Source: Sphaerodactylus townsendi
Taxonomy: Eukaryota
Assembly (NCBI RefSeq): GCF_021028975.2
Contig: NC_059428.1
Location: 149,482,001 to 149,546,000, forward strand
Direction of reading: 5' to 3'
Length of the DNA stretch: 64,000 bases
Part shown: piece by piece, positions 16,079-42,200 of the stretch
How the letters are laid out: every line of letters begins with the position of its first letter
Numbering within the stretch: the stretch's first letter is position 1
Position numbers and translations under genes: made by a program
Notes under the pieces: generated by a model
What the model was told of the DNA's origin: nothing
What the model saw: the letters and a program-made list of their open reading frames with translations, nothing else
The model's database searches: none

Positions 16079-30004
<13,926 letters not shown>

Positions 30005-30564
30005 GCTGGCCTGCAGCAGCCCTTGATTGGGGCAGAGGAATGAAAGCAGGGGAGCTGGAAGGACAGAGTTAGGAACCAGGAATTAGCATCATCCCATCCC
30101 TCAAGGCCAAGTGCAGCTAGCCCAACCACTCCTAGTCCCAGAGGCAGGAAGGTCTAAAGTGACCAGGAGCCCAAGCAGCTCGGATGTTGACCCCAAACCA
30201 GACCGGGCAAGGGCTTCTGCAGAACCTCCTGGAAGGCAAAAATCCCCAAACCAAGGGCACCCCTCCCCATCCCCATTAGATCTTCCAGGGTGTGTGTGTG
30301 TGTGTGAAAAACCCGCCCAGGAGAACTCAATGCTGCAGGGCCAAGTGGCCGGGTTCACACGTGCAAGAAAATCAAGATCTGAACACACTGGATAAGTAGG
30401 CGGGCGTACACAAGAAGCAATTCAGGTGGATCGTGACCAAACATGAGCTGTCACTTACAGGAGGGAAGGGATGCCTTCCAATGCTATGGATCTACTGCAC
30501 ACATTCACACACACGCGTGCATGCACGAGCACCTGGGCACGGTCCTGGGAGGAAGGGGGCTCAC

Positions 30565-39233: not shown

Positions 39234-42200
39234 TCAGCCACACAAGGCCCTTCGTATCCGCGTCCGAACTTCTCCACGGCCCAAGGAGACCATCATTTCG
39301 GCAACGGCTGGCCCTTGCTAAAACACAGAAGAGAGTCACCACACGTGCAGAGACACGGGAACCTTTTCTGGTTCTCAAGATCCAAGTGGGTGAACTTGGG
39401 AGTTTGCTAACTTTCTGGGCAGAAAAGTCAAGGCCAGCAGCAATGAAAAATACCTCCTGGCAGCAGCAGTGGCATTTGCTCCAATGCCATGTGGGGCAGC
39501 TCACGACGTAGTGGTTAAGAGCAGGTGCACTCTAATCTGGAGAAACCAGGTTTGATTCCCCGCTCTGCCGCTTGAGCTGTGGAGGCTTATCTGGTGAACT
39601 AGATTAACTTGTGCACTCCCACACATGCCAGTTGGGTGACCTTGGGCTAGTCGCAGCTCTACAGAGCTCTCCCAGCCCCACCTACCTCACCTACCTTGTT
39701 GTGAGGGGGGAAGGGAAAGGAGTTTGCAAGCCCCTTTGAGTCTCCTACAGGAGAGAAAGGGAGGATATAAATCCAACTCTTCTCCTCCTCCTCCTCCTCG
39801 CTATCATCCTCACAAGACTGAAGTGGAGAGGTAGCTGAAATTTTGGCAGAACCACGACTGGCACGTGCGCCAAGCAGGCTTATCGTTACCCTCTTCCAAA
39901 GATACTGGAAGACTTTTTTTAAAAAAACGGCAATCACACCAAACATAGCTGAGCCAGGACGACTGTGCAGTTCCATAAACCACCTGATAAATCATTTTGG
40001 AAGAGGAAGGTTTGAAGCGGGGACTCACTTGCTGGCCACTGAGGGCCATGCGGAGGAGCTTCATCATGATGCTGAACTGGGTGCCTTTGACCTGCTCTGG
40101 CAGCTGGCGCAAGTCTCTGTTCAGCTCTTCCATAGTCAGGGCAGCTGCCGGGCGATCCAACAACCTAAATCCAAATCCAAATCCAAAACCTAGCTATTGT
40201 GGGCTTAAAACCGAGGTGCAAAAGCAATTTCAAATACAATAAAAAGATCATTATTTAACTCAACTCTGCATAATACACCGAAGCAAAACATACGCCGCCC
40301 AACAGCTTCAGATATTTCCACACTAGAGCTATTTAGAAGCTTAGCCATTTTTGTTTTATCAGAGAGGAGCATAAATCCTGTAAATAACACAGTTCTCAGA
40401 ATTGGTTCCTGATGTTGTTGTACTTTTGAACAATGGAGCAGGAATATGAGAAAGTGTTACAGTTGTATCCAGGACAGAATTGATGGAAGCACGGCGTTTC
40501 ATGCCTTGTGGAATACCAGAGAATAGACCTTGCAGAAGATGCTGCTTTGACGGAAGAGTTTACACCTTACGCTCTTGGTCATGACCCAGTCCTGCTATTG
40601 TGAATTAATAGAAGTTGTTGCAGATATATAGCAGGGCTAGTTTTCTGAGGGATAATCCCAAAGACTATTGGAGAGCAAGAGCTTTGTGCTTTGCTCAGGA
40701 GAAATTGGTACTCTTGATCAAATAATCTAGACTTTAAGCGATGGTAAATCTCCGGAGCGGTGAGCATTTGTAGGGCCTCCCAAGAGAATCCAACAACCTT
40801 TGCAAGGAGGGAGAACCAGACACCACTCACCACAGGGCAGCATCCCGCCCAACACGAAAAGGTATCCTTACACCTCGCAAAGGTGTGCACAGGTGGGATA
40901 AATGCCAGATAAAATTCACTCTGCTCTGGGAGTCATACTAAGCCAAGGAGCACTGAAAGAAAGCCAACCTCTGAGACAGAGGAGGCTGAGCAGTACCCGG
41001 GGATGCACCCGCTTACCCAAGGACCAGCCGGCCTATCTCATCTGCCTCTGGAGAAATGGCTCGCAGCTCTTCGAAAGGCACCGTGGGGCGGATCCATAGG
41101 AAAGCATACTTGGGTGACACCAGATCCTGGAGACGGCTGATGTGACCCTGGCAGAGGAAGGAGAGACAGTAGACCGGGAGTCCCCGGCCTTTTTCAGCCT
41201 GTGGGCAACTTTGGAACCCTGACTATTGTGGTTGTGGACACAACCACAAAATGGCAGCCACAAGAGGTGGAGTCAGCTGCAAAATGGCAGCCACAAGGGG
41301 TAGAGTCAGCTGCAAAATGGCAGCCACAAGAAGTGGAGTCAGCTGCAAAATGTAAAAAAAAATCAGCAATAAAGGTTCTCCATAACTCTAAAAGTATCTC
41401 AGACAAGAGCTCTGCTTAACAGGAATGCCTTTTTAAATTACCAGATTGTTTACTTTTCTTGCTTACACACAGATTATTATCAGTCATGCAGTGAAGATCC
41501 TTGTGCTGTGGCGGCACCCGCTGCCTGAAGCAATTAAAAAAACCCCCGTGCACAGCCAATGAGAAGCCGTGCAGGCCAAAAGCACCCGCCCACTTTCTAA
41601 AAACGCTTGGTGGGCGCCATGAAAGGTGCTGGTCAGTGCCACGGCTCCCCTGGGTGCCACGTTGGGGGCCCCCACAATAGATAGTCAGGAGATAGACTAG
41701 GCAGGGTTGTTTCTGGCCAAGCAGAGGGGACCCTGCGTGGCAACTGCGCCAATGCGCAGGCTGTAGGGGTATCTAAAAGGGAAACCCGGACAGCATTTGG
41801 CAGAGGTCACCCCCTCTCCCCAATCTGACTTACCCTTCTCAGCAAAAGCACCTGTTCCACATAAGAGGGCTCGAGAACCCCTCTGTCCATCAACTGCTCC
41901 CCATAGACCTGCTCCGCAGCTGCCAGCACCTCTGCAATTAGGCTGGGCCGTCGCCTCTCGTCCCCAATCTGCTGGGCCAGGTGGATTCTGGGTAAACACA
42001 GAGCACATTCAAGCAACCTTTAAAAATGCAGCAGCAGCAGCAGCAGCTCACAGAGAGGATGAAGGGACTTTTGGCAGGGCCAGTAGCAGACCTGCACGGA
42101 CCACCCTTCCTTAGCTCCACCGCAGCTGGGGCCTCGGCTGCTCTGGCAGAAGAATTGGGGAGGAAGATGAAGGTGGGGGCTTCCACGAGGAAAGCAGACG

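What the first reader, a model, noticed from the sequence alone, without database searches (positions are those of the whole stretch)
40155..40825. LINE inserted into the start of EARS2 exon 8 duplicates the splice acceptor
Seen in sequence: a 621-bp 5'-truncated LINE (40167-40787), sense to EARS2, is flanked by a perfect 12-bp TSD reading AG|GTTGTTGGAT on the coding strand, which is the acceptor AG plus the first 10 exon bases. The upstream copy keeps a good pyrimidine tract (TTCTCCCTCCTTGCAAAG, a 219-nt intron), but using it runs into TAA after 20 codons. The downstream copy precedes the intact exon and has only the LINE tail (GGTTTTGGATTTGGATTTGGATTTAG) as its tract. Inference: an essential gene survives an exonic insertion either by switching to the TSD-derived acceptor or by recursive splicing, since the upstream AG is followed by GT (a weak donor). 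The old acceptor could now be a poison/NMD switch. Caveat: the insert has many frameshifts, so it is either old or a poorly polished haplotype-specific segment.
Basis: partly seen in the sequence, partly recalled or inferred. Interest (0 to 1): 0.82.

Follow-up and report, generated by a model that had tools for sequence, protein, structure and literature searches.

The report
Retroposon in EARS2 exon duplicates acceptor
A real, lineage-specific jumping-gene insertion sits 10 bases inside a coding exon of the essential mitochondrial glutamyl-tRNA synthetase gene, and the insertion's own target-site duplication copied the splice acceptor, which most likely lets the cell splice the whole insert out as part of an enlarged intron.

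Summary
A 621-nt AT-rich insert (40167-40787) with a (GGATTT)3.5 tail lies between two perfect 12-nt repeats. On the gene (minus) strand these read AG|GTTGTTGGAT: the acceptor AG plus the first 10 bases of exon 8 of a bacterial-type GluRS gene (EARS2 orthologue).

Public contigs show it is not an assembly artefact. Two samples of one organism, 0-1 mismatches to the window in 860 nt of flank, run from unique flank into both ends of the insert and show no empty-site contig. A relative about 3.8% diverged has one contig that skips exactly 633 nt (621 + 12). The insertion is therefore younger than that split, not old. The insert belongs to a very high-copy repeat family, but I could not confirm the LINE family.

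Using the old acceptor gives TAA after 20 codons. Only the downstream, duplication-derived AG restores the conserved C-terminus. No RNA runs were available, so use of the downstream AG is inferred from three things: an essential gene, a single copy, and apparent homozygosity. Recursive splicing is unlikely because the regenerated donor is TGG|GTTGTT.

This is a new variant of known phenomena (the canine merle SINE in PMEL; introner splice sites taken from target-site duplications). Interest is moderate.

The parts
41017..41147 (-). EARS2 exon 7 (131 nt; ends in GG, the first two bases of a split Gly codon), with donor GT at 41016-41015
   Evidence: Open frame [10 protein letters not shown]...EIGRLVL+GG with acceptor cAG at 41149-41148 and donor TGG|GTAAGC
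40798..41016 (-). Ancestral intron 7 (219 nt), ending in the original acceptor AG (40799-40798) with its native pyrimidine tract
   Evidence: Sequence. Tract is 80% pyrimidine, longest run 12, with A at position -3. The same sequence is contiguous with exon 8 in the empty-site contig of organism D
40788..40799 (-). Upstream copy of the target-site duplication (AG|GTTGTTGGAT): old acceptor AG plus 10 exon bases, now followed by the insert
   Evidence: Perfect 12/12 direct repeat. Twelve letters fit both sides of the 633-nt skip in X7
40167..40787 (-). 621-nt retroposon fragment in the same orientation as the gene; no intact ORF
   Evidence: Summed contig depth 10^3-10^5 against 20-49 in the flanks, in four runs. 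GC 40%. Stops in all three frames. No Pfam, Rfam or Atlas match
40167..40187 (-). (GGATTT)3.5 microsatellite tail of the retroposon. It now serves as the only pyrimidine-like tract before the downstream AG
   Evidence: TRF reports period 6, 3.5 copies, 100% match. It is the only such tract in the window
40734..40736 (-). First in-frame stop (TAA) if the old acceptor is used
   Evidence: Translation of GG + 40797 onwards has its first stop at codon 22
40565..40570 (-). Two donor-like sites inside the insert (AGC|GTAAGG with G at 40570; AAG|GTGTAA with G at 40565). Paired with the old acceptor they would define a 227- or 232-nt poison exon
   Evidence: Consensus scan
40155..40166 (-). Downstream copy of the target-site duplication: a new acceptor AG (40166-40165) directly before the intact exon 8
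   Evidence: Tract is 55% pyrimidine (all T), longest run 4, with T at position -3
40029..40164 (-). EARS2 exon 8 (136 nt), encoding (G)[45 protein letters not shown], with donor GT at 40028-40027
   Evidence: The frame continues into exon 9
39234..39317 (-). Coding part of EARS2 exon 9 ([27 protein letters not shown], then stop)
   Evidence: Matches the last 25 positions of Pfam Anticodon_2 (PF19269), E 4.6e-4

Best explanation
A 5'-truncated non-LTR retroposon copy, LINE-like, with a (GGATTT)n tail, integrated by target-primed reverse transcription 10 nt inside exon 8 of the single-copy mitochondrial glutamyl-tRNA synthetase gene (EARS2). This happened after the window's species split from a relative about 4% diverged.

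The staggered cuts duplicated 12 nt, which happened to be the acceptor AG plus the first 10 exon bases. The intact exon 8 therefore still has an AG directly in front of it.

Productive mRNA is made by splicing the exon 7 donor (41016) to this duplication-derived AG (40166-40165). The old acceptor, 10 duplicated exon bases and the whole insert become part of an intron 7 enlarged from 219 to 852 nt. The retroposon's T-rich tail acts as a makeshift pyrimidine tract.

The old acceptor keeps its stronger tract and probably still captures some transcripts. Those carry a premature TAA, either through a 769-nt retained exon or a 227/232-nt poison exon, and should be degraded by nonsense-mediated decay (NMD).

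Shown: the insertion, its exact boundaries, the empty site in a relative, its presence in two samples, the single-copy status, and the coding consequences. Inferred: which acceptor is used and in what proportion.
For: - Exact anatomy: target-site duplication, tail and reading frames.
- Gene identity: the exons match bacterial-type glutamate-tRNA ligase TIGR00464 (3e-52 and 8e-20) and Pfam PF00749. The HLGG and KLSKR motifs are visible in the translations. The last exon matches the end of the GluRS anticodon-binding domain. COG7 lies downstream.
- Filled site in organism A: in samples S1 (X2) and S2 (X3), contigs run 39810-40188 and 40759/60-41240 with 0-1 mismatches. They cross both junctions without a break at the branch point, and no empty-site joint was listed.
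- Single copy: no extra contig or intron-less joint over exons 7 and 8 in X2 or X3, so there is no second copy or retrogene at 85% identity or more.
- Empty site in organism D: one 893-nt contig in X7 skips exactly 633 nt, with 12 letters that fit both sides.
- Only the downstream AG keeps the frame into the conserved C-terminus.
- No canonical poly(A) signal in the insert.
- The principle that a target-site duplication can supply a 3' AG is documented for introners (PMC11282704). Acceptor competition after an insertion at an acceptor is documented for the merle SINE (PMC7349775).
Against: - No RNA evidence of any kind. No listed run is RNA.
- The downstream acceptor looks poor: 55% pyrimidine, longest run 4, other AGs 25-39 nt upstream, and no clear yUnAy branch site (sequence). 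The old acceptor keeps an 80% pyrimidine tract.
- Contigs reach only 22 and 28-29 nt into the insert, below the tool's own 31-nt bridging rule. Contigs also show presence, not absence, so homozygosity is an inference.
- One of the two samples may be the individual that was assembled.
- I could not check the exon 7/8 boundary against orthologous proteins.
Confidence: 0.7

Rival explanations
1. The insertion is a segregating loss-of-function or strongly hypomorphic allele. It is tolerated because carriers keep an empty (wild-type) allele that the contig data failed to show. The downstream AG is used little or not at all.
For: The downstream acceptor is weak and the old one is strong. The insertion is young, since it is absent in a relative about 3.8% diverged. 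Contigs drop variants and cannot prove absence (tool caveat). Recessive EARS2 loss is tolerated in heterozygotes (established knowledge from human disease genetics).
Against: Two different samples both carry the filled site. In both, the flank contigs run through the junction without the break that a 50% empty allele would cause in a de Bruijn graph, and no empty-site joint was listed. The window assembly carries the insertion as well.
Confidence: 0.13
2. Recursive (two-step) splicing. Exon 7 is first joined to the old acceptor. The junction then acts as a new donor (TGG|GTTGTT) and is re-spliced to the downstream AG, removing the 633 nt.
For: The old AG is followed by GT, and the end product would be the correct mRNA. 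Recursive sites of the form AG|GT exist in vertebrate long introns (established knowledge).
Against: The regenerated donor matches the 5' splice-site consensus only at positions -1, +1, +2 and +6, and lacks +3 purine, +4A and +5G. The native donors here have the full GTAAG or GTGAG core.
Confidence: 0.05
3. The gene is functionally truncated or decaying. Transcripts use the old acceptor and encode a GluRS that lacks its last 72 residues, and this is tolerated or compensated elsewhere.
For: The old acceptor is intact and stronger. Its product ends after 20 foreign codons.
Against: The premature stop lies far upstream of the exon 8/9 junction, so NMD is expected (established rule). There is no canonical poly(A) signal in the insert. 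Exons 8 and 9 remain open with intact splice sites, and exon 9 still matches the end of the GluRS anticodon-binding domain. No second copy was seen.
Confidence: 0.05
4. Assembly artefact: the repeat was misplaced into the exon.
For: Compared with other family copies, the interior of the insert carries about a dozen extra single letters (40399-40503). That could reflect unpolished sequence.
Against: Both junctions are reproduced with 0 mismatches in short-read-derived contigs of two samples. A perfect target-site duplication and the exact empty site in a relative are signatures of a real integration.
Confidence: 0.02

Closest known systems
Canine merle SINE insertion in PMEL (intron 10/exon 11 boundary)
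   Same: A retroposon landed at a splice acceptor with a target-site duplication (15 bp) that contains the original acceptor. The retroposon tail acts as the pyrimidine tract, and the phenotype depends on which of two acceptors is chosen (PMC7349775).
   Different: Merle is an antisense SINE whose poly(T) lies between the branch point and the original acceptor, and it competes with a cryptic acceptor inside the SINE. It is a visible, semi-dominant mutation. Here the element is in sense orientation and lies 10 nt inside the exon, so the acceptor AG itself is duplicated. The native tract stays with the wrong copy. The allele looks homozygous in an essential gene.
Introner elements and transposon-derived introns whose 3' AG comes from the target-site duplication
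   Same: An element inserted into coding sequence is removed as intron sequence, with a splice site supplied by the target-site duplication (PMC11282704).
   Different: Introners are mostly short DNA transposons in protists, algae, fungi and tunicates. They bring their own donor and create a new intron. Here a non-LTR retroposon in a vertebrate brings no donor, and an existing intron is extended across it (219 to 852 nt). Splicing was not shown here.
Disease-causing exonic L1, Alu or SVA insertions in mammals
   Same: An insertion by target-primed reverse transcription into a coding exon, with a target-site duplication and a premature stop if retained (for example the reports listed).
   Different: Those are deleterious, rare alleles. 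This one appears homozygous in two samples and has a built-in rescue acceptor.
Vertebrate recursive splice sites (AG|GURAGU)
   Same: AG followed directly by GT at the old acceptor.
   Different: The regenerated donor GTTGTT lacks the RAGU consensus, and the intron is short. Tested here: not met.
[quoted passage not shown]
   Same: Retroposons with hexamer or trimer microsatellite tails and target-site duplications of 10 nt or more (PMC13295347).
   Different: Their tails are (CAA)n and (ACCTTT)n, not (GGATTT)n. No tRNA-like head was found. The family of this insert stays unassigned.

Membership tests
Non-LTR retroposon (LINE or LINE-dependent) insertion by target-primed reverse transcription | Perfect target-site duplication flanking the insert, and a matching empty site in a relative | tested here: met
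   12/12 repeat. The X7 contig skips 633 = 621 + 12 nt, with 12 letters fitting both sides
Non-LTR retroposon (LINE or LINE-dependent) insertion by target-primed reverse transcription | 3' terminal simple-repeat or A-rich tail abutting the target-site duplication | tested here: met
   (GGATTT)3.5 at 40167-40187, directly before the downstream copy of the duplication
Non-LTR retroposon (LINE or LINE-dependent) insertion by target-primed reverse transcription | Member of a dispersed multi-copy family | tested here: met
   300-400 contigs per run lie on the insert, with summed depth 10^3-10^5 against 20-49 in the flanks. There is no second copy in the 64-kb window
LINE proper (autonomous element fragment) | Homology to a LINE ORF2 (reverse transcriptase or endonuclease) or to a named LINE 3' end | tested here: inconclusive
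   No Pfam hit on the four longest stop-free translations. Atlas look-alikes were uninformative.
SINE | tRNA-, 5S- or 7SL-derived head | tested here: not met
   No Rfam match at E up to 1 on 40100-40860, either strand
EARS2 (mitochondrial, bacterial-type glutamyl-tRNA synthetase) | Class I Glu/Gln catalytic domain that scores best against bacterial gltX, with HIGH and KMSKS motifs | tested here: met
   PF00749 on three exons. TIGR00464 at 3.2e-52 and 8e-20, ahead of GluQRS, archaeal GluRS and GlnRS. HLGG and KLSKR seen in the translations
EARS2 (mitochondrial, bacterial-type glutamyl-tRNA synthetase) | C-terminal anticodon-binding domain encoded by the exons downstream of the insert | tested here: met
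   Exon 9 matches PF19269 positions 117-141 of 141, E 4.6e-4. Exons 7 and 8 alone give no hit
EARS2 (mitochondrial, bacterial-type glutamyl-tRNA synthetase) | Exon 7/8 junction at the same residue as in orthologues | not tested
Transposon-derived intron sequence with a splice site taken from the target-site duplication | The duplication supplies a canonical AG directly before intact coding sequence | tested here: met
   AG at 40166-40165 lies inside the downstream copy. The frame is restored only from 40164
Transposon-derived intron sequence with a splice site taken from the target-site duplication | The element is actually removed from mature mRNA | not testable with these tools
   No RNA run holds the locus
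Recursive splice site | AG followed by a sequence that regenerates a consensus 5' splice site (GURAGU) | tested here: not met
   The regenerated site is TGG|GTTGTT, 4 of 9 consensus positions

The most novel reading that the evidence does not exclude
A young exonic retroposon insertion, fixed or nearly so, in an essential vertebrate housekeeping gene was neutralised at once because its target-site duplication copied the splice acceptor. An exonic hit became an intron extension. It left behind a competing old acceptor that now diverts part of EARS2 pre-mRNA into nonsense-mediated decay. The split may be tunable by the length of the (GGATTT)n tail, much as the merle poly(A) length tunes PMEL splicing.
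Probability: 0.3. Interest if true: 0.7.

Novelty: new variant of a known kind. Interest (0 to 1): 0.5.

Why it matters
If RNA data confirm use of the duplication-derived acceptor, this would be a clean natural experiment in a vertebrate, with the empty-site allele of a close relative as a built-in control. It would show two things:
- How an exonic transposon hit in an essential gene can be tolerated from the first generation.
- How introns can grow or slide by absorbing exonic insertions.

It would also allow a direct measurement of competition between two identical AG|G sites, one with a native branch point and pyrimidine tract and one with a retroposon tail. It predicts lower EARS2 output in this species than in its relative. 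If RNA data refute it, the locus is an ordinary loss-of-function allele.

Tried and rejected
- **RNA evidence.** The look-up of sequencing runs (kind any) returned no RNA run.
- **Orthologue check of the exon 7/8 junction.** Exons 7 and 8 alone gave only chance hits in the PDB and nothing in Pfam or NCBIfam.
- **Naming the LINE family.** There were no Pfam hits on the insert's stop-free frames, no Rfam family and no useful Atlas look-alike. There is no other copy or other (GGATTT)n tract in the window. The last 134 nt form no unusually stable 3' hairpin (z -0.63). Its tail differs from the Bov-B (CAA)n and Sauria SINE (ACCTTT)n tails.
- **Premature polyadenylation inside the insert.** There is no AATAAA or ATTAAA, only one GATAAA.
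- **Assembly artefact.** Rejected.
- **'Old, decayed insert'.** Rejected, because the empty site persists in a relative about 3.8% diverged.
- **Earlier scan notes.** Nothing near this place.
Full report
**1. What is in the sequence**

On the minus strand, an exon ends ...CTGGTCCTTGG|GTAAGC at 41017. A stretch of 219 nt follows, ending ttctccctccttgcaaAG (AG at 40799-40798). After it comes GTTGTTGGAT and then 621 nt of AT-rich sequence (40% GC against 50-52% in the flanks). That sequence ends in GGTTTTGGATTTGGATTTGGATTT. Then AGGTTGTTGGAT appears a second time, followed by CGCCCGGCAGCT... up to CAGCAA|GTGAGT at 40029.

The repeat finder gives the two 12-mers as a perfect pair, 40155-40166 and 40788-40799. 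TRF gives the tail as 3.5 perfect copies of a 6-nt unit.

**2. The gene**

Stop-free translations on the minus strand match the class I Glu/Gln tRNA synthetase catalytic domain, PF00749 (E 6e-40, 5e-17, 7e-10 for three exons). They score best against the bacterial-type glutamate-tRNA ligase model TIGR00464 (3e-52 and 8e-20), ahead of GluQRS, archaeal GluRS and GlnRS. HLGG (HIGH) and KLSKR (KMSKS) are visible in the translations.

The last coding exon (39317-39234, [27 protein letters not shown]) matches the final 25 positions of the GluRS anticodon-binding domain PF19269 (E 4.6e-4). COG7 exons lie downstream on the same strand. From my own knowledge, this fits the vertebrate EARS2-GGA2-COG7 neighbourhood. 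The gene is therefore the EARS2 orthologue, and the interrupted exon is the eighth of nine.

Exon 7 (41147-41017) ends with GG of a split codon. Only an exon starting at 40164 keeps the frame through ...[12 protein letters not shown] into exon 9.

I could not compare the junction with orthologous proteins. 

**3. Is the insertion real, and how old is it?**

The locus search found DNA-type runs from five coded organisms and no RNA run. I laid contigs of four runs on 39810-41240.

- **Organism A, sample S1 (X2).** A 410-nt contig covers 39810-40188 with 0 mismatches. A 536-nt contig covers 40760-41240 with 0 mismatches.
- **Organism A, sample S2 (X3).** The same picture: 39810-40188 with 1 mismatch, and 40759-41240 with 0.
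- **What the A contigs show.** Both junctions of the filled site exist in two samples that are essentially identical to the window. The contigs reach only 22 and 28-29 nt into the insert, below the tool's 31-nt bridging rule, because they break where the sequence becomes repetitive. Even so, they pass the junction itself without a break. A half-frequency empty allele would create a branch exactly there. No empty-site joint was listed for X2 or X3, and no intron-less joint or extra contig over exons 7 and 8. The gene looks single-copy and the insertion looks homozygous in both samples. This is an inference from contigs, which show presence rather than absence.
- **Organism D (X7).** One 893-nt contig covers 39810-40154 and 40788-41223 with 30 mismatches and 1 gap in 780 nt (about 3.8%). 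It skips exactly 633 nt, with 12 letters fitting both sides. This is the exact empty site. It proves a true integration with a 12-nt target-site duplication, and it dates the insertion to after the A/D split.
- **Organism C (X5).** The picture is mixed. There are window-identical contigs on the exon 7 side. One of them starts at 40787, with 30 unaligned letters before it. There is also a 479-nt contig 11-14% diverged in exons 7 and 8, with 235 letters between them, against 237 expected for an empty site. I leave C unresolved.

**4. What the insert is**

Three to four hundred contigs per run lie on it, with summed depths of 10^3-10^5 against 20-49 for the flanks. It is therefore a very high-copy dispersed family in all four organisms. 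Together with the target-site duplication, the 3' hexamer tail and the absence of an RNA-gene-derived head, it is a non-LTR retroposon copy in sense orientation to the gene.

I could not confirm 'LINE' at the family level:
- No protein family matched its frames.
- The Atlas gave nothing.
- There is no other copy in the window.
- The tail differs from squamate Bov-B (CAA)n and Sauria SINE (ACCTTT)n tails (PMC13295347).

Two oddities remain. Summed depth is lower over the last ~120 nt (40194-40289) than further 5', although contig depth is a poor measure. And the window's copy carries about a dozen extra single letters at 40399-40503 relative to other family copies (table 4). These may be subfamily differences or unpolished indels in a repeat.

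**5. Consequences for splicing (inference from sequence)**

*Old acceptor (40799-40798).* The native branch region and tract are intact (80% pyrimidine, run of 12, A at -3). Using it reads [24 protein letters not shown] (stop at 40736-40734). That happens either in a 769-nt retained exon or in a 227/232-nt poison exon closed by the donor-like sites AGC|GTAAGG (40570) or AAG|GTGTAA (40565). The stop lies far upstream of the last exon junction, so NMD is expected (established rule). There is no canonical poly(A) signal in the insert.

*New acceptor (40166-40165).* It is preceded only by the retroposon tail (55% pyrimidine, all T, longest run 4, T at -3). Other AGs lie 25-39 nt upstream. It looks clearly weaker, but it is the only route to an intact protein.

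*Recursive splicing.* This would need TGG|GTTGTT as a donor. It matches the consensus at 4 of 9 positions and lacks +3R, +4A and +5G, whereas the native donors here have the GTAAG or GTGAG core. I rate it unlikely.

**6. Best reading**

The gene encodes the only mitochondrial GluRS. From established knowledge, EARS2 loss causes severe recessive disease in humans. It is single-copy here, and the insertion appears homozygous in two samples and in the assembly. At least part of the transcripts must therefore use the duplication-derived AG, so intron 7 has in effect grown from 219 to 852 nt by swallowing the insert. The old acceptor probably remains a leak into NMD. I give this 0.7.

The main rival, at 0.13, is a segregating null or hypomorphic allele whose empty partner was missed by the contigs. 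Recursion, a tolerated truncation and an artefact share the rest.

**7. Comparison with what is known**

The closest case is the canine merle SINE at the PMEL intron 10/exon 11 boundary. There a 15-bp target-site duplication contains the original acceptor, and the retroposon tail serves as the pyrimidine tract and decides between two acceptors (PMC7349775).

The principle that a target-site duplication can supply the 3' AG of transposon-derived intron sequence is documented for introners (PMC11282704).

This locus differs in four ways:
- The element is a sense-oriented non-LTR retroposon.
- The insertion lies inside the exon, so two identical AG|G sites compete.
- An existing intron is extended rather than a new intron gained.
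- The insertion is apparently tolerated in the homozygous state in an essential gene.

It is a new variant of a known kind. Its value rests on RNA evidence that I could not obtain.

**8. Earlier scan notes**

There are no earlier notes near this place. Two unchecked notes elsewhere in this genome mention chimeric retrocopies on LINE 3' ends. They raise the untested possibility that the 5' part of this insert is also a captured sequence.

Noticed in passing
window 40039-40141 and 41012-41151 (run X5, organism C): The same run holds window-identical contigs and, at similar depth (11 against 12.5), a 479-nt contig 11-14% diverged in exons 7 and 8. That contig has 235 unalignable letters between the exons, which is the length of an empty-site intron. 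This suggests a mixed sample, a hybrid genome or a second species in that run.
   Followed up: no
window 40399-40503: Relative to other copies of the repeat family, the window's copy has about a dozen extra single letters clustered in about 100 nt. The 40482-40577 stretch attracts almost no contigs at 85% identity. These may be unpolished indels in a repeat or a divergent subfamily.
   Followed up: partly
window 40194-40289: Summed contig depth over the 3'-most ~120 nt of the insert is 10-50 times lower than over its 5' and middle parts. For a 5'-truncated LINE family the opposite is expected. The insert might be a chimera of an abundant repeat on a rarer LINE 3' end, as earlier unchecked notes in this genome describe elsewhere.
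   Followed up: no
window 41247-41352: A 33-nt tandem repeat (3.2 copies, 93% match) in intron 6 of EARS2, next to another multi-copy repeat (depth 450-1280 at 41154-41240 in all four runs).
   Followed up: no
window 27668-30082, minus strand: The first exons of COG7 (PF10191 positions 1-202) lie downstream of EARS2 on the same strand, consistent with conserved vertebrate synteny.
   Followed up: partly
window 40073: Of the listed differences between the window and the empty-site relative within exon 8, three are synonymous (40029, 40038, 40080) and one changes Ser to Cys (40073). This is too few to test for constraint.
   Followed up: partly
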